Sequence record: PP777464.1
Direction: 5' to 3' (one strand)
Length of the DNA: 64,000 bases
Shown: one piece after another, positions 1 through 53,285 of the stretch
How positions within the stretch are numbered: the first letter of the stretch is position 1
Layout of the letters: each line of letters begins with the position of its first letter
Position numbers and translations under genes: made by a program
Notes under the pieces: model-generated
The model's database searches: none
The model's input: only the letters and a program-made list of their open reading frames with translations
What the model was told of the DNA's origin: nothing

Positions 1-2
1 CT

Positions 3-1532
3 GACAAAACTTTGATTGTTGATTTAGAAGATGGTAGTTCGTTCAATGCAACTGGTAAAGAATTGTATGATATTATCTTTGCTGAAGACAGTACTATTGT
101 ACTAAGTGCTAACGGAACACTTTTTGATAAGTCTAAGTATGGTGTAATTCCAGATATTCTTACTCAATGGTATTCTGAGCGTAAAGCACAACAAAAAATG
201 GTAATCGACTACAAACACATGTATAGTGATGGGTGGGAATTCAATGGTTCTGAGAAGGTTGAACCTTTGCTATCTAACTACACAAGTGGTACAATGTTCC
301 GTACAAACTTACATGACAATGATCCTGTTTATCTATTACGTATTGCTATTGGTAAAGGTCAATGGGAAGAAGTTGCAAAACTCATTGTGGAAAATGGTTT
401 AGTACTGAAAGATGGTCGTATTTTCTGTGCAACGGAAGATAAGAATTACTTCAAACAGCAAAGTGCATTCTGGAAACAGAACCAGCAAATTCGTAAGATT
501 CTTCTAAACAGTCTATATGGTGCACTATTGAACAAAGGTTCACGTTTCTTTGATAAGCGTTTAGGTCAGTCCGTTACCTTAACTGGTCGTTCTATGACTA
601 AACATATGGCAAGCCGTATCAATGAAATCACTACTGGCGTTTATAATCACCAAGGTGGCTCTGTAATTTACGGTGATACTGACTCCGTTTACTTCAGTGT
701 AACTCATTACCTGAAAGAACAAGGTATTCCATATAATCTTTCGAAAGAAGAAATCGTTGACATGTATATCAAAATCGGTGATGAAGTTGGTGAATCATTC
801 CCTTCATTCATGAACGAAATGTTCAATACTGGTATTGAGAAAGGTAAGATTGTTGGTGCAGACCTAGAGATGGTCGGTTCCCGTGGTCTATTCCTGAAGA
901 AAAAGCGTTATGCAATTCTCAAGTACTGGGAAGATGGTTTCCGTAAAGATGTTGATGGAAAGCCTGGTGAAATTAAAGCGATGGGTCTTGAAATTAAACG
1001 TTCAGATACGCCAAAATACATCCAGAACTTCCTAGAAGAGACTCTAATTGCATTGCTGGTGGGTGAGTCTGAAGCTCAACTTAAACAGCGTGTACGTGAC
1101 TTTAAAGAGGTATTTAAAGACATGCCTGTACACGAAAAGGGTTCACCGAAAACTGTTAAGAACTATACCAACTTAGAAGCAGAATATGAAGTTTCTGGTA
1201 AATGTAAAGTTGGTCACGTATTAGCAGGTATTCAATGGAACCGTCTACGTGAAGTATATGATGACAAAACTGTACCTGAAGTAACTGACGGTACAAAAGT
1301 AATTGTATGTAACTTAAAAGATAACCCGATGGGTATCAAAGCAGTAGGTTACCCAATTGACTGTGTGGAATATCTACCTGAATGGTTCTTAGAACTACCA
1401 TTTGATACAGAGAAAATGGAAGAAATAGTTCTAACTAAAAAATTAGAAAACATTTTTGGTATTCTGGATATGGATATTGGTATTCATGAGAAAAGCACAG
1501 CAGCCGTTAATAACGGATTCTTCACCTGGTAA
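3..1532 (+). CDS. Family B DNA polymerase (T4 gp43-like), C-terminal part; gene begins upstream of the window
   Basis: Motif B KILLNSLYG, motif C YGDTDS, and KKRYA / KAMGLEIKRSDTP; frame is open to the window edge. Confidence 0.95.
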   Translation, partial: DKTLIVDLEDGSSFNATGKELYDIIFAEDSTIVLSANGTLFDKSKYGVIPDILTQWYSERKAQQKMVIDYKHMYSDGWEFNGSEKVEPLLSNYTSGTMFRTNLHDNDPVYLLRIAIGKGQWEEVAKLIVENGLVLKDGRIFCATEDKNYFKQQSAFWKQNQQIRKILLNSLYGALLNKGSRFFDKRLGQSVTLTGRSMTKHMASRINEITTGVYNHQGGSVIYGDTDSVYFSVTHYLKEQGIPYNLSKEEIVDMYIKIGDEVGESFPSFMNEMFNTGIEKGKIVGADLEMVGSRGLFLKKKRYAILKYWEDGFRKDVDGKPGEIKAMGLEIKRSDTPKYIQNFLEETLIALLVGESEAQLKQRVRDFKEVFKDMPVHEKGSPKTVKNYTNLEAEYEVSGKCKVGHVLAGIQWNRLREVYDDKTVPEVTDGTKVIVCNLKDNPMGIKAVGYPIDCVEYLPEWFLELPFDTEKMEEIVLTKKLENIFGILDMDIGIHEKSTAAVNNGFFTW

Positions 1533-2890: not shown

Positions 2891-3097
2891 ATGCCATTAT
2901 ATACATATCGTTGTGAAAAAGAAGAATGTAAACACAGTTTAGAAAAGATTGTAAAAATTGCCAATCGTGAAGAACCTCATGATTGTCCTCAATGTAATGG
3001 TGAAAAGACTATGAAGTTGGAAGTTTTTACCCCTGGTGATAAAGGTGCAAATCTTTATTTCCGTGGTAAATGGTTTGCAAACACTGGAGGTTACTGA
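2891..3097 (+). CDS. FmdB-family zinc-ribbon protein
   Basis: MPLYTYRC..C and CPQC zinc-ribbon signature. Confidence 0.85.
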   Translation: MPLYTYRCEKEECKHSLEKIVKIANREEPHDCPQCNGEKTMKLEVFTPGDKGANLYFRGKWFANTGGY

Positions 3098-3098
3098 T

Positions 3099-3401
3099 AT
3101 GAAAATTAAAATGATTAACGATTATGTACTGGTTCGTCAAATTGAAGCACAGAATAAAAGTACTGGTGGTATTATCCTAGGAAACGTGGAACCACCATGT
3201 GTTGGTATGGTGATTTCAGTTGGTGAAGGTAAAGTACTACCTAATGGGCAAATTGCAGAACATAATATTTGTGTTGGTGATATGGTTGTATTCGGTCGTT
3301 CATCACTAAACACTCCTATCACTGAAGATCTTGGTGGTGGTGAAGACACATATTATGTGATGAAAATTGAAGAAATTTTTGGTAAGAAATCAAATGGCTA
3401 A
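3099..3401 (+). CDS. groES: GroES-like co-chaperonin (copy 1)
   Basis: DYVLVRQIEAQNKSTGGIIL...VISVGEG...VGDMVVF. Confidence 0.9.
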   Translation: MKIKMINDYVLVRQIEAQNKSTGGIILGNVEPPCVGMVISVGEGKVLPNGQIAEHNICVGDMVVFGRSSLNTPITEDLGGGEDTYYVMKIEEIFGKKSNG

Positions 3402-4119
3402 AAAAAGGTTTATTCCTTTCTGGATGGTCCCCGCTCATTGGGGACTTTCTGGTAAAGCGAAAGAGATTGCGAAAGCATACTACTATAACGATGATTATGA
3501 AGCTGATATGTTAGTTGCAGAACTTACATATCTAACACCATATGAAGTTGATGTAGCACAGTTGGATATCAAAAAGAAATACAATGTATTAGAAACTCTT
3601 GATTATCTAATAGCACAGGCAGATGTACAATTGAAGTATTCCAAGATTACCCGTGATGAGTATAATGTAAAATTACTTGATGCTAAATTAAGTACTGGTG
3701 CAATTACTCAAAAAGAGTATGATATGGAAGTAATCGAACTAATGCCTGATGGTGATGACAAACGTCTTAAAGCTATCGAGTTTGCATATCGTTATGAAGA
3801 GATTACACAACAAGAGTATTCAAAGGAAATCTTTACTTTACGTAAAGAACCTTGGATTGATTTGGATGTAGTACTTAATCCAGAAACAAATGAAGTTGAA
3901 TTTGTTTTTGATTATAATGAATACTTTTGGAAAAAGTTAAAAGCGGAAGGTCATCCAGGTAATGACGAAGAAGAAATTATTGACAACTTCGTTAGAGACA
4001 TGGGGCGTAAACTAGCTACGGATGATTTCAGTGATGATTATGACGTAAAGCTAGTGAATGCGAACGAAGGGTTAGAGAATCTACCTGGTTTACCTGAAGG
4101 GTTCCGTTCATACAAATAA
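3394..4119 (+). CDS. Hypothetical acidic protein (241 aa)
   Basis: Long ORF overlapping the groES stop; ends at a terminator. Confidence 0.75.
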   Translation: MAKKRFIPFWMVPAHWGLSGKAKEIAKAYYYNDDYEADMLVAELTYLTPYEVDVAQLDIKKKYNVLETLDYLIAQADVQLKYSKITRDEYNVKLLDAKLSTGAITQKEYDMEVIELMPDGDDKRLKAIEFAYRYEEITQQEYSKEIFTLRKEPWIDLDVVLNPETNEVEFVFDYNEYFWKKLKAEGHPGNDEEEIIDNFVRDMGRKLATDDFSDDYDVKLVNANEGLENLPGLPEGFRSYK

Positions 4120-4150
4120 AAAAAGGAGAGCAAAAGCTCTCCTTTTCTTT
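4120..4150. terminator. Bidirectional intrinsic terminator
   Basis: AAAGGAGAG-CAAAAG-CTCTCCTTT between convergent genes, flanked by A and T tracts. Confidence 0.85.
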
Positions 4151-4163
4151 TATCTTTAATTTA

Positions 4164-4853
4164 TTAAACCATCGCTGGGATGAATTTGAATAGTTTGATA
4201 CCGAAGTCACCAGCAGCATCAGCAGCTTGGGAACGTAGAACAACTTCAGTAACACCATCTTTAGCGAGTAGTGGAACTGCGGTTAGGTCATCAATTAGTA
4301 GACGGCCTTCTTCGATCTCAGTACTTGGAACGCCTTGGAAAGATTGAATATCTTTATCAAATACGTTAGCACGTTCAACGAGGAAAGTAACTACTGAAGC
4401 ACTAGCGATATCAACAGACCCAACACTTAGGATACCGTCAGCAGCGTTGGTAAAACCAGTAACTGCAAATGGCTCAACGTCGTTGCCAGCGATTTCGGAA
4501 GTAGCTATGATAACTGCACGTTGTTGAACAACATCAACGATACGTTTAACGTTAGTTTGTGCAGCGTAAGCAGCGTTATAATCAGCTTCTAGAGTTGCTG
4601 CTTCAAATGGAGTACCATCGATACGGATGATACCTTTTTCGTTTAGATATGCAACGATTTCATCAGCTACGTCAGTGTTTAGGAAACGTTGTAGACCAGC
4701 GAAAGAACCAACTGCACCAGTAACACGCACGTTAACATTACCAATTTTACTAATTGCGATAGATGCTAGGGCGTTTTTACCACAGAAGTAACCTAGAATT
4801 TTATCAAAGGAATAACCATTGATACGTTCAAAAGAAGTATTAGTATTAGACAT
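4164..4853 (-). CDS. Putative virion structural protein, paralog of 4869..5468
   Basis: Shares QQRAV..TS and TF.(V/C)ER..VFDK with its neighbour; highly biased codon usage; downstream of late promoters. Confidence 0.7.
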   Translation of the reverse strand: MSNTNTSFERINGYSFDKILGYFCGKNALASIAISKIGNVNVRVTGAVGSFAGLQRFLNTDVADEIVAYLNEKGIIRIDGTPFEAATLEADYNAAYAAQTNVKRIVDVVQQRAVIIATSEIAGNDVEPFAVTGFTNAADGILSVGSVDIASASVVTFLVERANVFDKDIQSFQGVPSTEIEEGRLLIDDLTAVPLLAKDGVTEVVLRSQAADAAGDFGIKLFKFIPAMV

Positions 4854-4868
4854 ATTGTAGTCCCCCTA

Positions 4869-5468
4869 TTATAGTTGTACTGGTAGAGCAGCACGAACTT
4901 TAATTGCAACAGCGTCAGCCGCAGCAGCATCACCAACACCATCAGTACCTAGAGCAACATAAGATTTGGTACGGAAGAATTTAGCTTGTGCAATTGCTTT
5001 AGCTAGTTCAACAGTTGGGTCAACTGGAACAGAGTAAGCAGCACCTGGACGAACTTCTTGTTTGTCAAATACGTCTTGACGTTCACAGATGAAGGTTAGA
5101 GCAACAGAACCAGCACCACCTGTAACATCAGCACCACTAGTACCAAACGCGATTACGTTACCACCAACGGTTTTAAAGTCAGCAGGGATAACAACAGCGG
5201 TGTCTAGAGCTAGTACGGAAGTAGTAACTAGAACTGCACGTTGTTGTAGTAGTTGGGTAATCATGAATTGGTTGTATTGAGCATTACTGATTGCAGTTTG
5301 TAGTGCTTCATCTTGAATTTCGGAACCGTCAGAAGTAACAGCGGTAGTACCAACTTCAACATCTGCTGGTAGATCAACAACGATGGTTACGAAACCATTG
5401 TTACCACCCCAGTATTCACGAGCAGTAGCAGACATACCATAGTTACGGTTAAAAGAATTAAGACTCAT
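4869..5468 (-). CDS. Putative virion structural protein
   Basis: GGAG RBS, tandem GATAAATA late promoters upstream, paralog of 4164..4853. Confidence 0.7.
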   Translation of the reverse strand: MSLNSFNRNYGMSATAREYWGGNNGFVTIVVDLPADVEVGTTAVTSDGSEIQDEALQTAISNAQYNQFMITQLLQQRAVLVTTSVLALDTAVVIPADFKTVGGNVIAFGTSGADVTGGAGSVALTFICERQDVFDKQEVRPGAAYSVPVDPTVELAKAIAQAKFFRTKSYVALGTDGVGDAAAADAVAIKVRAALPVQL

Positions 5469-5510
5469 AAAAATCTCCTTGTCAAATTTTGTGCAGGAAC
5501 ACCCTGCTTA

Positions 5511-5588
5511 ATATTATTTATCAAAAAATATAAACCACATTTAAATTTAAGGCAATATTCCCTGATCTCTATGATATTATTTATCAAA
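5511..5588 (-). promoter_or_regulatory. Tandem late promoters (GATAAATA x2) within a duplicated 15-mer
   Basis: ATATTATTTATCAAA at 5511-5525 and 5574-5588 (+ strand), reading TTTGATAAATAATAT on the minus strand. Confidence 0.65.
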
Positions 5589-5591
5589 TCT

Positions 5592-10922
<5,331 letters not shown>

Positions 10923-13755: not shown

Positions 13756-14574
13756 ATGACAAAATTAGATGAGTTCCTATCAAACGTATCAGTACTAGAC
13801 ACAGAAACAACTGGAGTTGAAAGTGAAGATGATATTATCGAATTTAGTATTTCATATCCTCATAATGCTCATGAGAATATTGATACCATCGATAACTATA
13901 CTTTACGTTACAAACCACTAAAAGATATACCACCAGAAGCAAGTGCAGTTCATTTCATCAGTACTGAAGATGTAGCAAACTGCATTGGTTATAAAGATGA
14001 CTTAGAAAACATCGACGCACTCATGGGGTGTCGTGATTATTTTATTGGACACAACGTTCAATTTGACCGCCGAATGATGGTAGATAACGAATATAAATAT
14101 CGTAACTCAGTTTCGCAGTACTTGCTCGATGAAGATAAATGGATTTGTACCCTTCGTTTAGCTAAGAAGATGTTTGCAGAAGACACTGAATTCAAAAACT
14201 TAACTCTAAGTTATTTGTGGTATAAATTTGGTTGCTATCGTGATGTACATCGTGCAGTCAATGCTCACGCAGCAAAAGATGACGTGTTTATGTGTTATCA
14301 AGTTCTAATCAAATTGATTGAAGTTGCGATTGAACGTGGACATATTGACCCTAATGGTGACATTGGTGAACAAATCGTAACATTCTGTAATACACCAATG
14401 CGTTATAAATTCATGCCATTTGGTAAACACAAAGGCGAATCAATGGAAACTGTTCCATTGAACTATATTGAATGGATGATTACTAACAGTGATATTCTTG
14501 ATGCAAGTAACCCAAACTGTGATAAAGATTTAGTATATACATTTGAGTACGAATATAATACTCGAACTAATTAA
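13756..14574 (+). CDS. DEDDh 3'-5' exonuclease (DnaQ/ExoX-like) with a C-terminal PFGKHKG domain
   Basis: VLDTETTG, IGHNVQFD, AHAAKDD; FMPFGKHKG...YIEWM. Confidence 0.9.
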   Translation: MTKLDEFLSNVSVLDTETTGVESEDDIIEFSISYPHNAHENIDTIDNYTLRYKPLKDIPPEASAVHFISTEDVANCIGYKDDLENIDALMGCRDYFIGHNVQFDRRMMVDNEYKYRNSVSQYLLDEDKWICTLRLAKKMFAEDTEFKNLTLSYLWYKFGCYRDVHRAVNAHAAKDDVFMCYQVLIKLIEVAIERGHIDPNGDIGEQIVTFCNTPMRYKFMPFGKHKGESMETVPLNYIEWMITNSDILDASNPNCDKDLVYTFEYEYNTRTN

Positions 14575-14589
14575 TAAAGGTATTCATGG

Positions 14590-16074
14590 ATGAAAACTTG
14601 TAAGCTAACCTTACTGGACGAGGTTAATTGTAAATTTGAGGGACTAGATCCCTCAATTCGTCAGAAGATGATTCGTGCAACAGAATATGTACTTCCATAC
14701 GCTAAGTTCACCCCTGCTGGTCGTATTGGTCGTTGGGATGGTAAGGTACAGTTTATGAACTTAGGTGGCAGTACTTACTACCACATGTTGGATAAGTTGT
14801 TGCCAATCTTAGATGAAGCAAAAATTGATATTGAACTTGAAGATCATCGTGTCAATTATGGATTCAATTTTGAACCAATTGATGAAGATATTTTTAGTGA
14901 TGTTGTGTTTGGTGCTGGACACCACATGGAAGGTAAGTCAATCAAGCTCAGAGAGCATCAGGTGAACGCAGTTAATGCTTGTCTTGCAAACCCACATGGT
15001 TTATTATTAGCAGCTACAGGGGCTGGTAAAACGCTCATCACAGCGGCATTATCCAAGAAGGTACAAGAGTATGGACGTTCTGTGATTATCGTACCTAGTA
15101 CTGATTTGGTGCAGCAAACATATGATGACTATGTTATGTGTGGTCTTGACACTGGAGTGTTCTATGGTGCACAGAAAGACTTTGGTCACCAACACACAAT
15201 CACTACCTGGCAGTCATTCAACTCTTTGTGGAAGAAAACAAAGAAAGGTGAAATTGAACTTACTGAACAAGACGTTCATGACTTTATTGATGGTGTGGTT
15301 TGTGTGATTGTCGATGAGTGTCAAGGTGCTGGTGGTGATGCATTAGTTCAAGTACTCTCTAAAGTTATGAATAACGTCCCACTTCGCTGGGGATTAACTG
15401 GTACAATCCCTAAAGACCAAGTTGTCGCTGCGAAGATTAAATGTAACGTTGGTGATGTGATATTTAAAATCACAGCTAAAGAATTACAAGATAAAAAAAT
15501 ACTAAGCACATGTAATGTGAACTGTATTAAACTTAAAAGTAATTTAAAGTTCGCGTCATATGCAGAAGAATTGAAGTACTTAGTTACTGACCGTGATAGA
15601 ATGGCATATGTAGCATCACTGATAGGTGCGTTGGCAGAATCTGGAAACACTTTAGTACTGGTTGATAGACTTGAAGCTGGTGAATTGCTTTGTGAATTTT
15701 TGGGTATTCCTAAGTCAGAATTTGTTCGTGGGGAAACCAAAAAGAAAGACCGTGAATCTTCATATGGTGAAATTCGCTGGGCTGATAACAAAATACTCAT
15801 TGCAACCTATGGGGTAGCAAGTACTGGTATCAGTATTTCTCGTTTGTATAATGTCGTTCTAATCGAACCAGGAAAAAGCTTCGTTCGTACAATACAGTCC
15901 ATTGGTCGTGGGTTGCGTCGTGCAGAAGACAAAGACCACGTGGAAATCTTTGATATCAGTGGTACAAACAAATATAGTGCAAAACACTTACGTGAACGTT
16001 TACAATACTATAAGGAAGCACAATATCCTCATAGTATCATAGATGTTAAGGATTGGGAAAATACAGCGGGATAA
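14590..16074 (+). CDS. uvsW: SF2 helicase (UvsW-like)
   Basis: LREHQ, ATGAGKT, IVDECQ, GLTGT, QSIGRGLR. Confidence 0.92.
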   Translation: MKTCKLTLLDEVNCKFEGLDPSIRQKMIRATEYVLPYAKFTPAGRIGRWDGKVQFMNLGGSTYYHMLDKLLPILDEAKIDIELEDHRVNYGFNFEPIDEDIFSDVVFGAGHHMEGKSIKLREHQVNAVNACLANPHGLLLAATGAGKTLITAALSKKVQEYGRSVIIVPSTDLVQQTYDDYVMCGLDTGVFYGAQKDFGHQHTITTWQSFNSLWKKTKKGEIELTEQDVHDFIDGVVCVIVDECQGAGGDALVQVLSKVMNNVPLRWGLTGTIPKDQVVAAKIKCNVGDVIFKITAKELQDKKILSTCNVNCIKLKSNLKFASYAEELKYLVTDRDRMAYVASLIGALAESGNTLVLVDRLEAGELLCEFLGIPKSEFVRGETKKKDRESSYGEIRWADNKILIATYGVASTGISISRLYNVVLIEPGKSFVRTIQSIGRGLRRAEDKDHVEIFDISGTNKYSAKHLRERLQYYKEAQYPHSIIDVKDWENTAG

Positions 16075-17914: not shown

Positions 17915-18605
17915 TCCCGTATACAAATGTAAGTTCTGTGATAAAGAATTTAAACGCGAAGACACAGTTAACACACATAAGTGTGTTAAACGTGACCGCT
18001 ACGAAGATCGTGATAGCCGCCCCATGAGGGAGGCTTTTCGCATTTATATGCAATTCATGGAGTTAAACCATTTCCCTTTCAAGAAGGGAGTTGAACCATT
18101 AATGGCTTTTATAAAATCAAAGTACTTTAGTGATTTTTATGATTTTGCAATTTATTATTTGAACAACCGTGATATTTTAGATATTGATGGTTTTGTAAAA
18201 AGTCTAATTGTAAGAAACCGTCCTATTATGGAATGGAGTACTTATAAAGCAAAGGATGAATGGATATTAGATTGTATTCGTTCTGAATCTCCCAATGCTG
18301 CGGTTTCCCGTAGTGTTGTTGCGATGGTGGAATGGGGTCAGAATCTGAACTTGGAGTGGAATAAGTTTTTTTCCAATGTGAGTTCTGCCCGTGCAATTGC
18401 ATGGATTGAGAGTGGTAAGATTTCACCTTGGATTATCTGGTTAGCACCAAAAGAAAGTACTAATAAGTTTTTCAAGAATCTCTCTAACTCTGAAATCGAG
18501 TATATACTTAAATACATTGATCCTAGTTACTTTGAGGTTAAAACTATAAAGTACAAAAAGGAATGTGATGAAATAAAAAGTATGCTACGTGAGGCTGGAT
18601 TATGA
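17895..18605 (+). CDS. Hypothetical protein with an N-terminal zinc finger
   Basis: YKCKFCDKEF...HKC. Confidence 0.7.
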   Translation: MAKKSSSPVYKCKFCDKEFKREDTVNTHKCVKRDRYEDRDSRPMREAFRIYMQFMELNHFPFKKGVEPLMAFIKSKYFSDFYDFAIYYLNNRDILDIDGFVKSLIVRNRPIMEWSTYKAKDEWILDCIRSESPNAAVSRSVVAMVEWGQNLNLEWNKFFSNVSSARAIAWIESGKISPWIIWLAPKESTNKFFKNLSNSEIEYILKYIDPSYFEVKTIKYKKECDEIKSMLREAGL

Positions 18606-18931
18606 ATGGAAAAAGTATATATAATAAAATACCAGAAGGGTATGTACCTGTGCCTAAAGCAGATAAATCTAAATCTTTATCATTGCTTAGACAGGGTTCT
18701 ATAACTGAAATTACACTTGATGGTAAAACCTTTCAGGTGCACGATCCTGTTCGTGTAGAAAAAATTATCAGTATGGTTGAAAGACATGAGGAAAGATTCT
18801 TTGGTCTAAGTCAAGAGTTGTCAAAGACCAAACAAAAGTGTACAATGTTAGAAAATCAGGTAACCAAATTATCTAACACTGTAAACAAATTGCAGGAGCA
18901 AATCAAAAATGCAGGATTCGACAAATTCTAA
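18602..18931 (+). CDS. Hypothetical protein with a C-terminal coiled coil
   Basis: ATGA overlap; heptad-rich C-terminus. Confidence 0.65.
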   Translation: MNGKSIYNKIPEGYVPVPKADKSKSLSLLRQGSITEITLDGKTFQVHDPVRVEKIISMVERHEERFFGLSQELSKTKQKCTMLENQVTKLSNTVNKLQEQIKNAGFDKF

Positions 18932-19547
18932 TTCGTACCGTAAAGCACGAACAGATATCGACATTGACTTTAAAGATAGTAAGTCAGTGATTGCACAGCT
19001 TCCTTGTGTGCGAAGTACTGAAAAAATTACGGAGGATGGTTTAATCCCCCATAACAGTGGTGTTCATTTTGATAATATACCAATTGACCCTATCACTGGT
19101 TTAGCCAGCATACAATATAAAGAAGCCGAACGCTTGGGATATCAAAAGGTAGATATCCTGTCACAATCGGCTTACCAGTATGTTCGTGATAGAGCACATT
19201 TAAAAGAACTAATGAATCAGGAACCTAATTGGGATCTTCTGTTAGAACCAGAAATAGTTGAACATCTTTCACAGATTAAAAAACACGTTACATTATTAAA
19301 TGTGTGGAAACCTAAATCCATTGATGAACTTGCAATGTTTATTGCAATGATTCGTCCTGGAAAAAGGCAGTGCCAAAGTATGAATACATGGAGTGAAGTT
19401 GAATCCACTATATGGGATTACAGTACTATTGGCACAGACCAAGCAGGAAATAAGTTACGATATTTCAAAAAGCCACATGCTTATGCATACAGCTTAATGA
19501 TTGTAGTTCAACTTAACGCTTTAGTTGAACATCTTACTTCTTCTTAA
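18909..19547 (+). CDS. Minimal DnaE (Pol III alpha)-like catalytic fragment, C-terminal half
   Basis: TDIDIDF (D401/D403 equivalents), HNSGV, QKVDIL (D555 equivalent), AMIRPG, FKKPHAYAY. Confidence 0.85.
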   Translation: MQDSTNSNSYRKARTDIDIDFKDSKSVIAQLPCVRSTEKITEDGLIPHNSGVHFDNIPIDPITGLASIQYKEAERLGYQKVDILSQSAYQYVRDRAHLKELMNQEPNWDLLLEPEIVEHLSQIKKHVTLLNVWKPKSIDELAMFIAMIRPGKRQCQSMNTWSEVESTIWDYSTIGTDQAGNKLRYFKKPHAYAYSLMIVVQLNALVEHLTSS

Positions 19548-19887
19548 GAGCCACATTACGACGCTTGATGCGTTTTTGTGGCAAATCACTTAAAGAAACT
19601 ACTGGACCACAAACGAAATTCACCGCAGGGGTATCGAATCTCTGTGTGTAAGGTTCAAATTTCTCCATCTCTTCTTGGAAGAATAGACAGACTGGAATTG
19701 ACCTGTTGCTTTGCCACCACCAATCATGTGCTATACCCAACAATTCATCTTGCATTGGTTCATCCATATCATCAAAGCAGTAAAGAGTAGTATACTGTTT
19801 ACTTTTTATCTTGATAATACCAATGAAAGTTTTACCATCACACTGAACTACCGTGATAAATGGTGGAATAGTATTATATTGATTCAT
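19534..19887 (-). CDS. Hypothetical protein (117 aa); minus strand, mislabelled + in the track
   Basis: The reverse complement of 19861-19887 reads MNQYNTIPP; the stop is at 19534. Confidence 0.75.
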   Translation of the reverse strand: MNQYNTIPPFITVVQCDGKTFIGIIKIKSKQYTTLYCFDDMDEPMQDELLGIAHDWWWQSNRSIPVCLFFQEEMEKFEPYTQRFDTPAVNFVCGPVVSLSDLPQKRIKRRNVALKKK

Positions 19888-20977: not shown

Positions 20978-22033
20978 ATGAACGCTGTACAAAACATCAT
21001 GGCACAAATCATGAATGACCCAGTACCAGGAATTGGTATGTGGACACATCACAATTGTCCTGCTTGTGTGTTCCGTGGTCATTCACGCCCCGATACTAAA
21101 AATCGCGGCAATCATATGTTTAACGCAGATGGTTCTGTTTCTTATAACTGTTTTAACTGTAGTCTAAAAACTGGGTGGCAACCTGGAAAATATATGAGCA
21201 AAGATATGGAGTCTTTGCTCATTTCTTTTGGTGCACAGGATAAGGAAATAGAACTAGCTAAATTTTACATTAAAGAAATGGTTGATAGTGGAGACTTTGC
21301 AGAACAAGAAACTACTGCATCTAAACTATATCAACGTGTAACTGTTCGTGAATTACCACCGAACTCAAAAACATTCTGGGAATGGGCATCGTTACCAGAA
21401 GAGCAAATACCACAAGAATTTATTAGTGTTCTGAATCATGTGAATGAGCGAAATCCATATCTATTAGATTTAGAATTGTATTGGAGTCCAGCTAAAGAAC
21501 ATAAAATGTATGACCGATTTATCATACCATACGTTATGAACGGTAAAATTATCGGATATACTGCTAGACACAAACTTAAAGACCCAGGAAGTACCTATCG
21601 TTTTATTAATCAGGTCAGTACTAATATTCTATATAATTATGATCTGTTACAAGATGAACGAATTAAAACTATATTAGTTTGTGAAGGTCCAATGGATGCA
21701 GCACTAATGGGTGGTGTTTCTGCAAATAACTTTAAATTGTCAGCAGTACAAATAGATGTACTTAAAGCTGCACAAGAAAAAGGTAAAAAGATTGTTATCG
21801 TACCAGACCGTGATAAGGATGGATTACAAACAATCGAACAAGCACTAGAATATGGATTTAGTGTTTCTTTCCCAGATTTTGGGGCAGTACGTGTTGGAAG
21901 TACTATACGTCACATTAAAGATTTTGACGAAGCATGTGCTAGATTTGGAAGATTATTTTGTTTACAACTGATACATGATAGTATAGTTGACGAGCCTTTC
22001 TATATTAAAGCACAAACGGATAAGTGGATGTAA
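20978..22033 (+). CDS. DnaG/gp61-type DNA primase
   Basis: N-terminal CPAC...CFNC zinc finger; TOPRIM VCEGPMDA and IVPDRDKDG. Confidence 0.88.
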   Translation: MNAVQNIMAQIMNDPVPGIGMWTHHNCPACVFRGHSRPDTKNRGNHMFNADGSVSYNCFNCSLKTGWQPGKYMSKDMESLLISFGAQDKEIELAKFYIKEMVDSGDFAEQETTASKLYQRVTVRELPPNSKTFWEWASLPEEQIPQEFISVLNHVNERNPYLLDLELYWSPAKEHKMYDRFIIPYVMNGKIIGYTARHKLKDPGSTYRFINQVSTNILYNYDLLQDERIKTILVCEGPMDAALMGGVSANNFKLSAVQIDVLKAAQEKGKKIVIVPDRDKDGLQTIEQALEYGFSVSFPDFGAVRVGSTIRHIKDFDEACARFGRLFCLQLIHDSIVDEPFYIKAQTDKWM

Positions 22034-22059: not shown

Positions 22060-23580
22060 ATGATTCAAAGCACAGTGGACGTCAAACAGTATGGGATTAA
22101 TGCACAACAATACTTACTATCCCAAGTTTTCAGTAATCCAGATTTATTTGTACGTTGTAAAAATATTCTAAAGCCAGAATATTTTGATAAAACATTTCAT
22201 GAAAGTATTCAGTACGTTCATGATTATGCAGCAAAATATAGTTCATCCCCTACACTGAAAGATATTGAAGTGAAAGGTGGTTATCAGTATGATCAATATG
22301 AAGTACAAGAACTTCATAAACAGGCAGTACTGGATACCTGTAGTGAGTTTTGCCGTCACAAAGCTCTAGCTCTAGCAGTAGAGAAAGGTATGGAATTAGT
22401 ACATCAGAAAAAATATGGTGGCATCGAAGAACTCATTCGTGAAGCTATGTTAGTATCTGTACAGAATGAGTTGGGTCTTGATATCTTTGAAAATCCAGAA
22501 GATACCATTCGTTCATTGAGCACTATGCAAGGTTCATTCAAGAGTGGATGGGAAACCCTTGACTATAAACTATTCGGTGGTTTTGGTCGCCGTGAACTTG
22601 AAATCTTTGCAGCAGCGTCTGGTGGTGGTAAATCAGTAGTACTACAGAACTTAGCAGTTAACTTTGCTAAGGCTGGTATGAATGGTGCATACATTTCACT
22701 AGAACTAGCAGAAGAGTTGGTAGCCGTTCGTATCTATGGTATGATGACTGAATCTAAGCTAAGTAACGTTAAGAACGAAGCTGAAAAGATTGGTCTACGA
22801 GTTCAAATGGAAGGCAAGGATAGTGGTATATTGCGTATTAAACGTTTACCAGAATCCGTAACAACCACTGATGATATTGAAAGTTATCTTCGTGAATTGC
22901 AAATTAAAATGGAAGTCAAATTAGATTATGTTTGTGTGGACTACCTTGACCTATTAACATCAAATCGTCTTGGTCCTAATGATAAATCTAATACATTTAC
23001 AAAAGATAAATTTGTATCTGAAGAATTGCGTGCACTAGCAACCAAAATGGATTTGACCGTCTTCACTGCGTCACAGTTTAACCGTAGTGGTATGGATGAA
23101 GATAAGAAAAGTCAAAGTCAGATTGCTGGTGGTATTTCTAAAATCTATACTGCGGATAACGTTATCTACATTGAAGCACGTAAAGAAACTGGCGAACTTT
23201 GGTTTGACTTCCAGAAAACACGTAACAGTAGTGCAGTTGGTTCACGTTTGCGTATGTCATATGATATCGATTCACTTCGTGTACTAGACCACGCAACCAC
23301 AATCCAACAATTCGAAACTGATGGGTCAGGATTCCGTCACAGTGGCATCTCTAAGGTCGGCGGTGGTAACATGGCAATGCCACCAAGTACAATGCAAACA
23401 CTGCGTCATACGCTTTCTGGTGCTCCTAAACCAAGCACTACACCGAGTGTTGAAAGCGTAACACTAAATACAGATAGTGATCCAATCACTTCTACACAAA
23501 CTGAATCCCAGCCTCAACAGCCTCACATTGGTACTGATCGTGTAAATGCAATGAAGCAATGGTTAAATCAAAGGAAATAA
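22060..23580 (+). CDS. Replicative DnaB/gp41-like helicase
   Basis: AASGGGKS, YISLELAE, VDYLDL, TASQFNR, QIAGGISK, KTRNS. Confidence 0.93.
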   Translation: MIQSTVDVKQYGINAQQYLLSQVFSNPDLFVRCKNILKPEYFDKTFHESIQYVHDYAAKYSSSPTLKDIEVKGGYQYDQYEVQELHKQAVLDTCSEFCRHKALALAVEKGMELVHQKKYGGIEELIREAMLVSVQNELGLDIFENPEDTIRSLSTMQGSFKSGWETLDYKLFGGFGRRELEIFAAASGGGKSVVLQNLAVNFAKAGMNGAYISLELAEELVAVRIYGMMTESKLSNVKNEAEKIGLRVQMEGKDSGILRIKRLPESVTTTDDIESYLRELQIKMEVKLDYVCVDYLDLLTSNRLGPNDKSNTFTKDKFVSEELRALATKMDLTVFTASQFNRSGMDEDKKSQSQIAGGISKIYTADNVIYIEARKETGELWFDFQKTRNSSAVGSRLRMSYDIDSLRVLDHATTIQQFETDGSGFRHSGISKVGGGNMAMPPSTMQTLRHTLSGAPKPSTTPSVESVTLNTDSDPITSTQTESQPQQPHIGTDRVNAMKQWLNQRK

Positions 23581-50451: not shown

Positions 50452-50763
50452 ATGTTCAATCCATTTTTTGATCCATCAACCATGACCGAGAAAGAGTTAC
50501 AATTGAAAATTAACGAACAATCGATGCGTATTACGTCTGCTCGTGCAGCAGGTATGAGTGATATGATTGTTGGTAACATGCAAACCGTTCTGAATCAGTG
50601 CTATGCTGAATTAGAGATTCGTCAGGGACAAAAAGAAAAAACCTCCTATGATGAGCAAGACCCATGCATATTTGACATGAACTCTTACTTAACGGATAAC
50701 GAAGAGGATCAGAAGAAGAAAAATGAAAGTACAAGGAAACAGATTTATAAGTCCCAATGGTGA
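50452..50763 (+). CDS. Hypothetical protein (103 aa)
   Basis: AGGAGG RBS. Confidence 0.7.
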   Translation: MFNPFFDPSTMTEKELQLKINEQSMRITSARAAGMSDMIVGNMQTVLNQCYAELEIRQGQKEKTSYDEQDPCIFDMNSYLTDNEEDQKKKNESTRKQIYKSQW

Positions 50764-51241
50764 TGTAAAATGTAACCTTAATGCAGTCGTGTATGCAATC
50801 AACTGTGGTGCAGATATTCAGTACTTACAGCTACAGGAGATTGATGAACCGGAACGATTGAAATTTAACGATAATTGTAAAAAATTTGGTTTAGAACAGC
50901 GTATGCTGGATTATACAATAGAACATGATAAAAACCATGAGCTATGGCGTTATGATCCAGTGTACGATAACATCAACTTGCGTGAGTACTTTTTACAGAA
51001 ATGTACATCGGATGAAGCCCGTGAACGTGTAATGTATGAGATTGATTTGTTTGAACATTACAACATGACTAAGCTTTTAAGATGTATGATCTGGTTAGTT
51101 GATTATATGGAAGAGCACAATATTTTTTGGGGTCTTGGGCGTGGTAGTTCAGTGGCTTCGTATTGTTTGTTCCTGATTGATTTGCATATGGTTGATTCTT
51201 TGAAGTATAAACTAGATGTAAATGAATTTTTGAAATGGTAG
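50723..51241 (+). CDS. Minimal DnaE-like fragment, N-terminal half of the palm/thumb
   Basis: ERVMYEIDLF...IFWGLGRGSSVASY...VDSLKYKLDVNEFLK versus DnaE ERLETEL...VPVGPGRGSGAGSL...DPLEFDLLFERFL. Confidence 0.85.
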   Translation: MKVQGNRFISPNGDVKCNLNAVVYAINCGADIQYLQLQEIDEPERLKFNDNCKKFGLEQRMLDYTIEHDKNHELWRYDPVYDNINLREYFLQKCTSDEARERVMYEIDLFEHYNMTKLLRCMIWLVDYMEEHNIFWGLGRGSSVASYCLFLIDLHMVDSLKYKLDVNEFLKW

Positions 51242-51652: not shown

Positions 51653-51979
51653 ATGACCAATAAAGTAATGACAGCTTGTAAAGGTAAAGTTATTGTAACT
51701 GAACTAGAACATGGTGAGCGTAAAACCGCAGGTGGTATTGTACTGACAAGTGATGATGGTAAGATACGTGGTATTCGTTGTCGTTGGGCTAAAGTATATT
51801 CTGTTGGTGAAGACATTACCGATATCAAAGAAGGACAATGGATTCTAATTGACCACGGTCGTTGGTCGAGAACTATTGAGATTGATGGTATTAAAATGAA
51901 TCTCGTTGATTATCCAGCAGCAGTAAGTTTGGTATCTGACACTGATCCACGCATCTCTGCTCAAACATTTGGTCGTTAA
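51653..51979 (+). CDS. groES: GroES-like co-chaperonin (copy 2, divergent)
   Basis: KVIV...ERKTAGGIVL...VYSVGED..DIKEGQWIL. Confidence 0.8.
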   Translation: MTNKVMTACKGKVIVTELEHGERKTAGGIVLTSDDGKIRGIRCRWAKVYSVGEDITDIKEGQWILIDHGRWSRTIEIDGIKMNLVDYPAAVSLVSDTDPRISAQTFGR

Positions 51980-52331: not shown

Positions 52332-53285
52332 ATGACTACATTATGGACTGAAAAATACCGCCCACAAACTATGGAAGATTATGTATCTAAGAACGAAGCC
52401 CTACGTCAGAAGATGGAAGAATGGATTCGTACTGGTGATATCCCACATATTGGATTTTTTGGACCAGCAGGGACAGGAAAAACTTCAGCAATCAAAGTAC
52501 TACTGAATGGTCTGGAAGCTAACGGACACCTTGACCCTAGTGATGTAACAACACTGAATATGTCAGATGAAGGTATCGATGCTGTTCGTGACAAAATTGA
52601 TGCAGCAGCAAAACTATCATGTTTTGGTCGTTATCGTGTATTTGTTCTGGAAGAAATGGAACAAATGAACCACAAAGCACAGGGTAGCTTGAAACGTGTC
52701 ATGGAAGATTACCATGAAAATGCTCGTTTCATTCTTACCAGTAATGAACCACATAAGATTCAGAAACCTATTATCTCTCGTGTTCAGGTCATCACCATTG
52801 AGAAGCATGATATGGAACAATTCATGTCACGCATCTACAACGTACTATTGGCAGAAGGAGTAGATCTAAGTACTGATGAAAGTATTGAACAAGTACAAAA
52901 ATACATCAATGCTTCATATCCTGATTTCCGCAAAACGCTAAACGTATTGCAAAGTTCAGTAGTCGATGGTAAACTTGTAAAGCTTGAAGACAGTATTGAG
53001 AACTCTGCTGGGTATCGTACTGCCATTATTGATGCACTAAAAGCTGGTAACATTCGTCAAATGCGTGAGCAGATCGTGCAAAACATTCCTGATGATGAGA
53101 TGGATGCATTCTTCTCTTATCTGTATCGTAATGCAGAAATGTTCAGTACTGATGAAATTACTCTAATGAAAATTAAGGTTAAGATTCGTGACGCTGTTGT
53201 TAAACAAGCTACCGTGTCTGACCGTGAAATGAATCTCAGTGCATTACTGTGTGAGATTGACCTAATCTGTTCGGGGAACATGTAA
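52332..53285 (+). CDS. Clamp-loader AAA+ subunit (gp44/RFC-like)
   Basis: WTEKYRPQT, GPAGTGKTS, LNMSD, LEEME, SRVQ, YPDFRK. Confidence 0.93.
   Translation: MTTLWTEKYRPQTMEDYVSKNEALRQKMEEWIRTGDIPHIGFFGPAGTGKTSAIKVLLNGLEANGHLDPSDVTTLNMSDEGIDAVRDKIDAAAKLSCFGRYRVFVLEEMEQMNHKAQGSLKRVMEDYHENARFILTSNEPHKIQKPIISRVQVITIEKHDMEQFMSRIYNVLLAEGVDLSTDESIEQVQKYINASYPDFRKTLNVLQSSVVDGKLVKLEDSIENSAGYRTAIIDALKAGNIRQMREQIVQNIPDDEMDAFFSYLYRNAEMFSTDEITLMKIKVKIRDAVVKQATVSDREMNLSALLCEIDLICSGNM

What the first reader, a model, noticed from the sequence alone, without database searches (positions are those of the whole stretch)
18909..19547. Minimal split DnaE-like polymerase: catalytic half beside primase and helicase
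This 212-aa ORF starts exactly where DnaE reads ...MPDFDVDF and keeps all three catalytic Asp equivalents (TDIDID, KVDIL), but has no PHP, OB or clamp-binding domain. Its complementary N-half is 32 kb away (50723), and no intein motifs are visible. The phage already has a family-B replicase, so a different role is implied, such as primer extension, repair or another nucleotidyl transfer. Split Pol-III-like modules may already be noted in comparative surveys of such jumbo phages, so novelty is mainly functional.
Basis: partly seen in the sequence, partly recalled or inferred. Interest (0 to 1): 0.68.

Follow-up and report, generated by a model that had tools for sequence, protein, structure and literature searches.

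The report
Split minimal Pol III polymerase (known)

Summary
The window is Escherichia phage fEgEco12 (PP777464.1, 100% identity). The 212-aa ORF at 18909-19547 is real and under strong purifying selection (dN/dS about 0.04). It is the C-terminal half of a minimal C-family (DnaE-like) polymerase core. D16, D18 and D82, the equivalents of E. coli DnaE D401, D403 and D555, are invariant in 24 homologues down to 40% identity. Its AF2 model matches only Pol III alpha structures (Z 9.8; E. coli residues 399-784). The 172-aa ORF at 50723-51241 supplies the other palm half (invariant GRGSS; E. coli 273-394). The pair is predicted to bind (ipSAE 0.91, best control 0.33). In 160 IMG/VR loci each half is a stand-alone ORF, and the partner never lies within 10 kb. 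Each half sits in its own conserved replication block: the C-half with primase and DnaB helicase, the N-half with the clamp loader. The genome has a family-B polymerase and no PHP or HhH domain. There is no intein or intron. GenBank and PHROGs already annotate both genes. The function is still untested. Novelty: already known.

The parts
18909..19547 (+). C-half of the split minimal Pol III alpha. It carries the second part of the palm (DxD strand D16/D18 and third catalytic Asp D82) and a reduced finger domain (IRPGK, FKKPH). It has no thumb.
   Evidence: phrog_11778 E 2e-106. Invariant residues D16, D18, D20, K80, D82, R149, P150, K187, H190. AF2 pLDDT 90.7. VIA Z 9.8 to 3e0d_A and Z 8.4 to E. 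coli 2hnh residues 399-784; the next unrelated chain scores Z 3.6. dN/dS 0.033/0.77 against the phage 121Q copy.
50723..51241 (+). N-half of the split minimal Pol III alpha. Residues 67-172 are the first part of the palm, with the triphosphate-binding GRGSS loop. Residues 1-66 are a phage-specific N-terminal extension with no DnaE counterpart found.
   Evidence: PF07733 36.4 bits, phrog_11127 E 4e-85. Invariant G137, G139, R140, G141, S142, S143. Profile hit to E. coli DnaE 320-393. VIA Z 8.6-10.1, model 67-172 against E. coli 273-394.
1..1532 (+). 3' part of the family-B (T4 gp43-like) DNA polymerase gene g356, the presumed main replicase.
   Evidence: PF00136 E 1e-18; annotation.
20978..22033 (+). 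Primase (Toprim), a conserved downstream neighbour of the C-half.
   Evidence: Weak Toprim Pfam hits; annotated as DNA primase subunit. A homologue lies downstream of the C-half in 64 of 80 IMG/VR loci.
22060..23580 (+). DnaB-like replicative helicase, a conserved downstream neighbour of the C-half.
   Evidence: PF03796 E 4e-17; present in 59 of 80 loci.
14590..16074 (+). UvsW-like SF2 helicase, the upstream end of the conserved block that holds the C-half.
   Evidence: ResIII, DEAD and Helicase_C hits; present in 49 of 80 loci.
52332..53285 (+). Clamp-loader AAA+ subunit, a conserved downstream neighbour of the N-half.
   Evidence: PF13177, PF00004 and Gp44_lid hits; present in 52 of 80 N-half loci.
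50452..50763 (+). Small conserved ORF (103 aa) that overlaps the N-half start by 41 nt. It may be translationally coupled to the N-half. Function unknown.
   Evidence: phrog_15348 E 1.6e-52. Adjacent to the N-half in 77 of 80 loci. Not annotated in PP777464.1.

Best explanation
The two ORFs encode the two subunits of a non-covalent heterodimer that rebuilds a minimal C-family (Pol III alpha / DnaE-type) polymerase core. The N-half (residues 67-172) gives the first part of the Pol-beta-like palm, including the GRGSS loop that holds the triphosphate of the incoming nucleotide. The C-half gives the strand with the two metal-binding aspartates (D16, D18), the third aspartate (D82, with K80) and a shortened finger domain (IRPGK, FKKPH). 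The chain is broken in the short loop between the GS motif and the DxD strand (E. coli DnaE about 394-399), so the active site forms only when the two proteins pair their beta-strands. The PHP domain, thumb, clamp-binding motif, HhH and OB domains are absent. Shown here: homology, fold, invariant catalytic residues, universal splitting, co-occurrence, purifying selection and a predicted interface. Inferred: that the dimer is an active, template-directed DNA polymerase acting as a second, accessory enzyme beside the family-B replicase. The conserved linkage of one half to primase and DnaB and of the other to the clamp loader suggests lagging-strand primer extension or recombination and repair synthesis.
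For: The window is identical to phage fEgEco12, and both genes are annotated there as polymerase fragments. Catalytic and nucleotide-binding residues are invariant down to about 40% (C-half) and 28% (N-half) identity. The structure matches are exclusive to Pol III alpha and PolC. For the C-half, Z is 9.8 with 201 residues aligned, E. coli 399-784, and the next unrelated chain scores Z 3.6. For the N-half, Z is 8.6-10.1 against E. coli 273-394. The two ranges abut. The complex prediction gives ipSAE 0.91 in 3 of 3 runs against a best control of 0.33. The runs agree in at least 93% of contacts and the partner pLDDT is 89. That mark was reached by 58 of 80 solved complexes and 2 of 110 mismatched pairs. 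The GS loop (N-half 134-145) touches the DxD strand (C-half 10-22). In 80 + 80 IMG/VR loci all C-half ORFs are 189-238 aa and N-half ORFs 155-220 aa (one open frame of 310). No partner was found in about 2.1 Mb of flanking DNA. Eight of 10 large contigs carry both halves, including both complete genomes, and the two that lack one are 38% and 60% complete. Genus counts in GenBank phages match for the two halves. dN/dS is about 0.04. Synteny is conserved for both halves. Each gene has its own start codon and a purine-rich ribosome-binding site. Iyer et al. 2021 reached the same reading.
Against: No biochemical activity has been shown for any member, and no experimental follow-up was found. By sequence alone the C-half gives no significant hit to any solved Pol III alpha. 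Pfam gives only a sub-threshold finger match of 13.7 bits against a 22-bit cut-off. hhalign against single DnaE sequences is not significant, although it aligns the right motifs. The link for the C-half therefore rests on a predicted structure and on motifs. The enzyme lacks a thumb and any recognisable clamp-binding element, both of which normally hold the primer-template. Processive templated synthesis is therefore not assured. The high complex score may partly reflect the model's memory of single-chain DnaE folds (caveat). The RNA evidence is inconclusive: only low-depth contigs in RNA libraries, and no hits in the one raw-read RNA run.
Confidence: 0.7

Rival explanations
1. The heterodimer is a Pol-beta-fold nucleotidyltransferase that no longer copies a template. 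It might add untemplated nucleotides to DNA or RNA ends, make a nucleotide signal, or modify a primer.
For: It has no thumb, clamp-binding, OB or HhH parts, and the finger domain is cut to about half. The palm belongs to the same superfamily as many non-templated transferases (established knowledge, reviewed in PMC11646218). The phage already has a complete family-B replicase with clamp and clamp loader.
Against: The retained finger elements (IRPxK, FKKxH) are invariant and align structurally with the DnaE fingers up to residue 784. From memory, the His of the FNKSH motif is regarded as the sugar-discriminating residue of C-family polymerases. All structural neighbours are replicative polymerases and none is a CCA-adding, poly(A) or cGAS-type enzyme. 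Both genes sit in replication-gene blocks.
Confidence: 0.17
2. The two halves are joined into one chain after expression, either by a split intein (protein trans-splicing) or by RNA trans-splicing of a split group I intron.
For: Phage DnaE genes are interrupted elsewhere. In Clostridium phage CS266P1 the gene is broken in the same loop by an HNH endonuclease gene. DnaE split inteins are known in cyanobacteria (established knowledge).
Against: Pfam finds no Hint or intein domain in either half. The N-half ends 2-3 residues after the EFLK motif, and the C-half has only 0-15 residues before DIDID across the family. That is far too short for intein halves. The flanking DNA is filled by overlapping or closely spaced conserved ORFs, and no Rfam intron match occurs in the window. 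Both ORFs have their own start codons and ribosome-binding sites.
Confidence: 0.02
3. The ORFs are decaying remnants of a once intact dnaE gene and have no joint function.
For: An earlier genome paper called the 172-aa protein 'truncated' (PMC5259590). Pfam barely recognises the C-half.
Against: dN/dS is about 0.04. Catalytic residues are invariant across hundreds of phage lineages. More than 590 IMG/VR loci exist for each half. Strict co-occurrence and conserved synteny argue against decay.
Confidence: 0.02

Closest known systems
Minimal split DNA polymerase III alpha of group 2.2 jumbo phages (Iyer, Anantharaman, Krishnan, Burroughs, Aravind 2021, Viruses 13:63; PMC7824862)
   Same: It is the same entity. 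It has an N-terminal NTP-binding protein and a C-terminal Mg2+- and template-binding protein, encoded by distantly located genes. It sits in phages that also carry a family-B polymerase and no other Pol III domain. The proposed role is a second polymerase for one strand or for repair. RaK2, 121Q, GAP32, CBB, PA5oct and Atu_ph07 all carry it.
   Different: Nothing essential differs. This report adds a high-confidence fold match with residue ranges, a controlled complex prediction, counts of splitting and non-adjacency in 160 metagenomic loci, the conserved neighbourhoods of each half, and an example in a 141.6-kb (non-jumbo) phage.
Bacterial Pol III alpha (DnaE1; E. coli 2HNH, T. aquaticus 3E0D)
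   Same: It has the Pol-beta-like palm with the GS loop, the DxD strand and a third Asp (D401, D403, D555 correspond to D16, D18, D82). K553 corresponds to K80. The FRPGP and FNKSH finger motifs correspond to IRPGK and FKKPH. The structural superposition covers E. coli 273-394 plus 399-784.
   Different: It is two chains instead of one. It has no PHP domain. About 88 residues fewer lie between the DxD and the third Asp (64 against 152), so there is no thumb. The fingers stop near residue 784. It has no beta-clamp motif, HhH or OB domain, and no tau- or epsilon-binding parts. The N-half carries a 66-residue extension with no counterpart.
Two-polymerase replisomes (B. subtilis PolC + DnaE3; eukaryotic Pol alpha hand-off)
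   Same: An accessory polymerase coexists with the main replicase. Here it is genetically linked to primase and helicase, which fits a primer-extension and hand-off role. This is an analogy from established knowledge, not tested here.
   Different: Here the main replicase is family B and the accessory enzyme is a stripped C-family core. No hand-off has been demonstrated.
Phage polymerase genes interrupted by mobile elements (T4-like split gene 43; SPO1-type introns with I-HmuI; Clostridium phage CS266P1 dnaE)
   Same: In CS266P1 a full-size dnaE is broken in the very same loop. ORF1 ends ...RFMRKEKKKLP..., an HNH endonuclease ORF follows, and ORF2 starts MDIDVDF.
   Different: There the pieces are adjacent, keep the PHP domain and full fingers, and flank a homing-endonuclease gene. 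Here the pieces are 14-244 kb apart in every genome examined, with no mobile element beside them.

Membership tests
C-family DNA polymerase catalytic core (Pol III alpha / DnaE / PolC) | Pol-beta-like palm, first part, with the G-S triphosphate-binding loop | tested here: met
   The N-half hits PF07733 at 36.4 bits against a 23.9 cut-off. GRGSS is invariant. VIA Z 8.6-10.1 against DnaE 273-394.
C-family DNA polymerase catalytic core (Pol III alpha / DnaE / PolC) | Three catalytic aspartates (E. coli D401, D403, D555) | tested here: met
   D16, D18 and D82 are invariant in 24 sequences down to 40% identity. Motif register was checked against E. coli DnaE, and the structural range is 399-784.
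C-family DNA polymerase catalytic core (Pol III alpha / DnaE / PolC) | Finger domain | tested here: inconclusive
   PF17657 scores only 13.7 bits against a 22 cut-off. The structure aligns through E. coli residue 784 with the IRPxK and FKKxH motifs kept. The finger domain is therefore present but truncated.
C-family DNA polymerase catalytic core (Pol III alpha / DnaE / PolC) | N-terminal PHP domain | tested here: not met
   No PF02811 match anywhere in the 374,733-bp genome, while the control matched in 14 of 14 genomes.
C-family DNA polymerase catalytic core (Pol III alpha / DnaE / PolC) | Thumb domain between the DxD strand and the third Asp | tested here: not met
   There are 64 residues between D18 and D82, against 152 between D403 and D555. 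The model shows only a beta-hairpin, a loop and a short helix there.
C-family DNA polymerase catalytic core (Pol III alpha / DnaE / PolC) | C-terminal HhH, clamp-binding and OB modules | tested here: not met
   No PF14579 match in the genome. The C-half ends about 22 residues after the FKKPH motif.
C-family DNA polymerase catalytic core (Pol III alpha / DnaE / PolC) | Template-directed DNA polymerase activity | not testable with these tools
   This needs biochemistry. No published assay was found.
Split minimal Pol III alpha of group 2.2 jumbo phages (Iyer et al. 2021) | Two stand-alone proteins (N: NTP-binding; C: Mg2+ and template binding) from distantly located genes | tested here: met
   The ORFs are 172 and 212 aa and lie 31.8 kb apart. 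The same holds in all 160 loci and all GenBank relatives inspected.
Split minimal Pol III alpha of group 2.2 jumbo phages (Iyer et al. 2021) | Coexists with a T4-type family-B polymerase, clamp, clamp loader, DnaB and primase, with no other Pol III domains | tested here: met
Split-intein (trans-spliced) DnaE | Intein (Hint) halves at the break point | tested here: not met
   No Hint or intein Pfam hit. The extensions at the break are 0-15 residues.
Intron- or homing-endonuclease-interrupted polymerase gene | Adjacent exons flanking an intron or endonuclease gene | tested here: not met
   The halves are 31.8 kb apart with about 40 genes between them. No Rfam intron match in the window. No partner lies within 10 kb in 160 loci.

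The most novel reading that the evidence does not exclude
The split core may be a primase-coupled primer extender, analogous to Pol alpha or DnaE3, that hands over to the family-B replicase. It may need further conserved small neighbours as missing 'thumb' or clamp adaptors, for example the 103-aa ORF overlapping the N-half start or the N-half's own 66-residue extension. Its break point may also be the scar of an ancient homing-endonuclease or intron insertion in the GS-DxD loop, as still seen in Clostridium phage CS266P1, rather than a pre-LUCA ancestral state.
Probability: 0.2. Interest if true: 0.6.

Novelty: already known. Interest (0 to 1): 0.27.

Why it matters
If the heterodimer is active, it would be the smallest known C-family polymerase and the only one assembled from two chains across its active site. 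That makes it a useful minimal model for how the Pol III palm works and evolved. It would also be a case of a bacterial-type and an archaeo-eukaryotic-type polymerase working in one replisome. That significance was already set out in 2021. What is missing is an experiment, not a discovery.

Tried and rejected
- Sequence-only links of the C-half to solved structures failed. phmmer and a 24-sequence profile gave no PDB hit at E up to 10. hhalign against single DnaE sequences was not significant, though it aligned the KxD and RPG motifs.
- Only the predicted structure gave a clear match for the C-half.
- Rfam at gathering thresholds found no intron or other RNA in the window or in the two interrupted phage dnaE loci. 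The intron status of CS266P1 and WH1 is therefore open.
- No held genome exists for the window, so the GenBank record was searched through a locus handle instead.
- The expression check was inconclusive. One raw-read RNA run gave no reads, and three RNA-library contig sets cover the C-half only patchily at low depth, which cannot be told from DNA carry-over.
- The intein, trans-splicing and pseudogene readings were considered and rejected (see rival explanations).
- The large all-against-all protein search was not run. The word search, family scans and 160 loci already answered the question, and the operators asked to spare it.
- The Bacillus phage WH1 dnaE breaks were checked as a possible parallel. 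They fall at other positions, after the DxD and before FNKSH, so they were not used as support.

Full report
**Identity of the window.** A 2.5-kb stretch around the finding is 100% identical to Escherichia phage fEgEco12 (PP777464.1, 374,733 bp). It is 99.6-99.8% identical to several sister phages and about 84% identical to 121Q and PBECO4-type phages. Window coordinate 1 corresponds to record position 210,878. The record annotates the 212-aa ORF as g381 'DNA polymerase' and the 172-aa ORF as g421 'DNA-pol3-alpha domain-containing protein'.

**The observation.**
- The ORF 18909-19547 (+) is present. It has an AGGAG box 10 nt upstream of its ATG, and it overlaps the preceding gene by 23 nt.
- It belongs to phrog_11778 ('DNA polymerase', E 2e-106). 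Pfam sees only a sub-threshold piece of the Pol III finger domain (13.7 bits).
- The second ORF, 50723-51241 (+), matches PF07733 (Pol III alpha NTPase/palm) above threshold and phrog_11127.
- A word-index search found 789 clusters related to the C-half and 110 related to the N-half. All fall within the 0.55-1.75x length range that this search covers.
- In an alignment of 24 C-half relatives (40-96% identity), D16, D18, D20, K80, D82, R149, P150, K187 and H190 are invariant.
- In 25 N-half relatives (28-93% identity), G137, G139, R140, G141, S142 and S143 are invariant.
- Against E. coli DnaE these correspond to GRGSGAGS 361-368, PDFDVDF 400-406 (D401, D403), VKFDFLG 552-558 (K553, D555), FRPGP 638-642 and FNKSHS 756-761.
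- The C-half is under strong purifying selection (dN 0.033, dS 0.77 against the 121Q copy).

**Fold.**
- The C-half profile finds nothing in the PDB by sequence.
- Its AlphaFold2 model is confident (pLDDT 90.7). The 16 best Foldseek hits are all Pol III alpha or PolC chains.
- VIA-align gives Z 9.8 (rmsd 3.9 Å, 201 residues aligned) to T. aquaticus Pol III alpha. It gives Z 8.4 to E. coli 2HNH, with model residues 13-212 on chain residues 399-784. The first unrelated chain scores Z 3.6.
- The N-half profile hits E. coli DnaE 320-393 (E 0.0024).
- The N-half model (pLDDT 80.8) aligns residues 67-172 to E. coli 273-394 (Z 8.6-9.0) and to M. tuberculosis DnaE1 (Z 10.1).
- The two proteins therefore cover abutting stretches of DnaE (273-394 and 399-784). 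The break lies in the loop between the GS motif and the DxD strand.
- The C-half has 64 residues between D18 and D82, against 152 in E. coli. This leaves no room for the thumb.
- N-half residues 1-66 have no DnaE counterpart in these searches.

**Do the halves bind?** A controlled complex prediction gave ipSAE 0.91 in all three runs, against a best control of 0.33. The runs agree in at least 93% of contacts and the partner pLDDT is 89. That mark was reached by 58 of 80 solved complexes and by 2 of 110 mismatched pairs, and these counts hold only roughly because my own alignments were used. The GS loop (N-half 134-145) lies against the DxD strand (C-half 10-22), and the N-terminal extension (N-half 1-30) lies against C-half residues 54-68. 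The tool warns that a resemblance to solved folds, here single-chain DnaE, can raise the score. The result supports binding but does not show it.

**Always split, never adjacent, always together.**
- In 80 IMG/VR loci found with the C-half profile, every ORF is 189-238 aa from stop to stop. No N-half homologue occurs in 0.99 Mb of flanking DNA.
- In 80 loci found with the N-half profile, the ORFs are 155-220 aa, with one open frame of 310. No C-half occurs in 1.1 Mb of flanks.
- Eight of ten large contigs (191-462 kb) carry both halves. Both complete genomes do, and the two exceptions are 38% and 60% complete.
- In GenBank phages the genus tallies agree: Escherichia 34/34, Pseudomonas 11/11, Salmonella 8/8, Erwinia 8/8, Xanthomonas 4/4, Yersinia 4/4, Klebsiella 11/10.
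- Distances range from about 14 kb (Xoo-sp13, Stenotrophomonas CM1) to more than 200 kb (Phosso, one IMG/VR genome).
- A 141.6-kb circular phage, Alishewanella Slickus01, also has both halves 11 kb apart, plus a family-B polymerase. The pair is therefore not confined to genomes above 200 kb.

**Context.**
- The C-half sits in a conserved block: UvsW-like helicase (49/80 loci), three unknown genes (56, 65 and 63/80), the C-half, a convergent minus-strand ORF (69/80), a structural-protein gene (74/80), primase (64/80) and DnaB-type helicase (59/80).
- The N-half sits in another block: a small ORF overlapping its start (77/80), the N-half, an unknown gene (72/80), a Cpn10-like gene (76/80) and the clamp-loader ATPase (52/80).
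- The genome also holds a 1002-aa family-B polymerase, whose end is window 1-1532, and a sliding clamp. It has no PHP or HHH_6 domain anywhere. Each half is single-copy.

**Covalent joining is unlikely.** Neither half has a Hint or intein match. The extensions at the break are 0-15 residues across the family. The flanks are occupied by conserved ORFs. Rfam finds no intron.

**Prior knowledge.** Iyer et al. [quoted passage not shown] They suggest it cooperates with the family-B enzyme in synthesis of one strand or in repair, and that it models an ancestral form. An earlier genome paper on phage CBB had noted the 172-aa protein as a 'truncated' Pol III alpha (PMC5259590). I found no later experimental work. 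The finding is therefore correct but already known.

**Mechanism and confidence.** I put about 0.7 on the reading that the two proteins form an active, template-directed minimal C-family DNA polymerase acting as an accessory to the family-B replicase. The two-subunit palm-and-fingers core itself I hold more firmly than that overall figure. The evidence is the invariant triad, the retained finger motifs and the replication-gene linkage. From memory, the His of FNKSH is taken to be the sugar gate of C-family enzymes; this was not tested here. The specific role is inference: primer extension next to primase and helicase, or recombination and repair synthesis. The main rival (about 0.17) is a non-templated nucleotidyl transferase, favoured by the missing thumb and clamp-binding parts.

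**Expression.** Contigs from three RNA-seq libraries cover parts of the C-half at low depth, and a raw-read RNA run gave nothing. This neither shows nor excludes transcription.

**Side observation on origin.** In Clostridium phage CS266P1 a full-length dnaE (PHP plus palm) is interrupted in exactly this loop. ORF1 ends ...RFMRKEKKKLP followed by a short tail, an I-HmuI-like HNH endonuclease ORF follows, and ORF2 begins MDIDVDF. This shows that the loop is a natural break or insertion point. It offers an alternative to the 'ancestral' view: a mobile-element insertion followed by separation and reduction. It is a lead only. Bacillus phage WH1's dnaE is broken at other positions.

Noticed in passing
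window 50452-50763 (+): This is a 103-aa ORF (phrog_15348, E 1.6e-52) that overlaps the N-half start codon by 41 nt. PP777464.1 does not annotate it. A homologue lies next to the N-half in 77 of 80 IMG/VR loci. It may be translationally coupled to the N-half or be an extra subunit.
   Followed up: partly
window 19534-19887 (-): This is a 117-aa minus-strand ORF (phrog_11637, E 6e-55), convergent with the C-half and overlapping its stop by 14 nt. It is conserved on that strand in 69 of 80 loci. The GenBank record instead annotates a 70-aa plus-strand ORF (g382, 19578-19790), which is probably a mis-call.
   Followed up: partly
L009 (Clostridium phage CS266P1, OP172775.1) 3032-6600: A full-size dnaE is interrupted in the same GS-DxD loop as the jumbo-phage split. 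An I-HmuI-like HNH endonuclease ORF (4460-4948) sits between the two pieces, and ORF2 starts MDIDVDF. Rfam at gathering threshold finds no group I intron there.
   Followed up: partly
L008 (Bacillus phage vB_BceM_WH1, LC597490.1) 2960-7158: dnaE is annotated as three ORFs separated by gaps of about 720 and 400 nt. The breaks fall just after the PDVDTD motif and just before the FNKSH motif. They are probably introns or other insertions at conserved sites.
   Followed up: partly
L172/L173 (Alishewanella phage vB_AspM_Slickus01, OQ508957.1): This 141.6-kb circular, non-jumbo phage carries both Pol III halves about 11 kb apart. Its family-B polymerase matches lie in two separate open frames (578 and 322 aa), reminiscent of split gene 43 in some T4-like phages.
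   Followed up: partly
window 7197-9499 (+): The large terminase is annotated as three overlapping ORFs (g367 'Gp17', g368, g369). This may be a frameshift, a split gene or an annotation artefact.
   Followed up: no
window 3099-3401 and 51653-51979 (+): There are two Cpn10/GroES-like genes in one window (g361, g423). The second (PF00166, E 1e-4) is a conserved neighbour of the N-half in 76 of 80 loci.
   Followed up: no
window 13756-14574 (+): This is a DnaQ/RNase T-type 3'-5' exonuclease with an ExoX-like C-terminal motif (PF00929, E 3e-14), 4.3 kb upstream of the C-half. It could be a trans-acting proofreader, but the PHP domain that binds epsilon in E. coli is absent here.
   Followed up: no
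window 18602-18931 (+): g380 is annotated 'tail needle protein gp26' and falls in PHROG 'virion structural protein'. It is a 109-aa coiled-coil protein inside a replication-gene block, and it overlaps the C-half start by 23 nt. The structural label looks doubtful.
   Followed up: no
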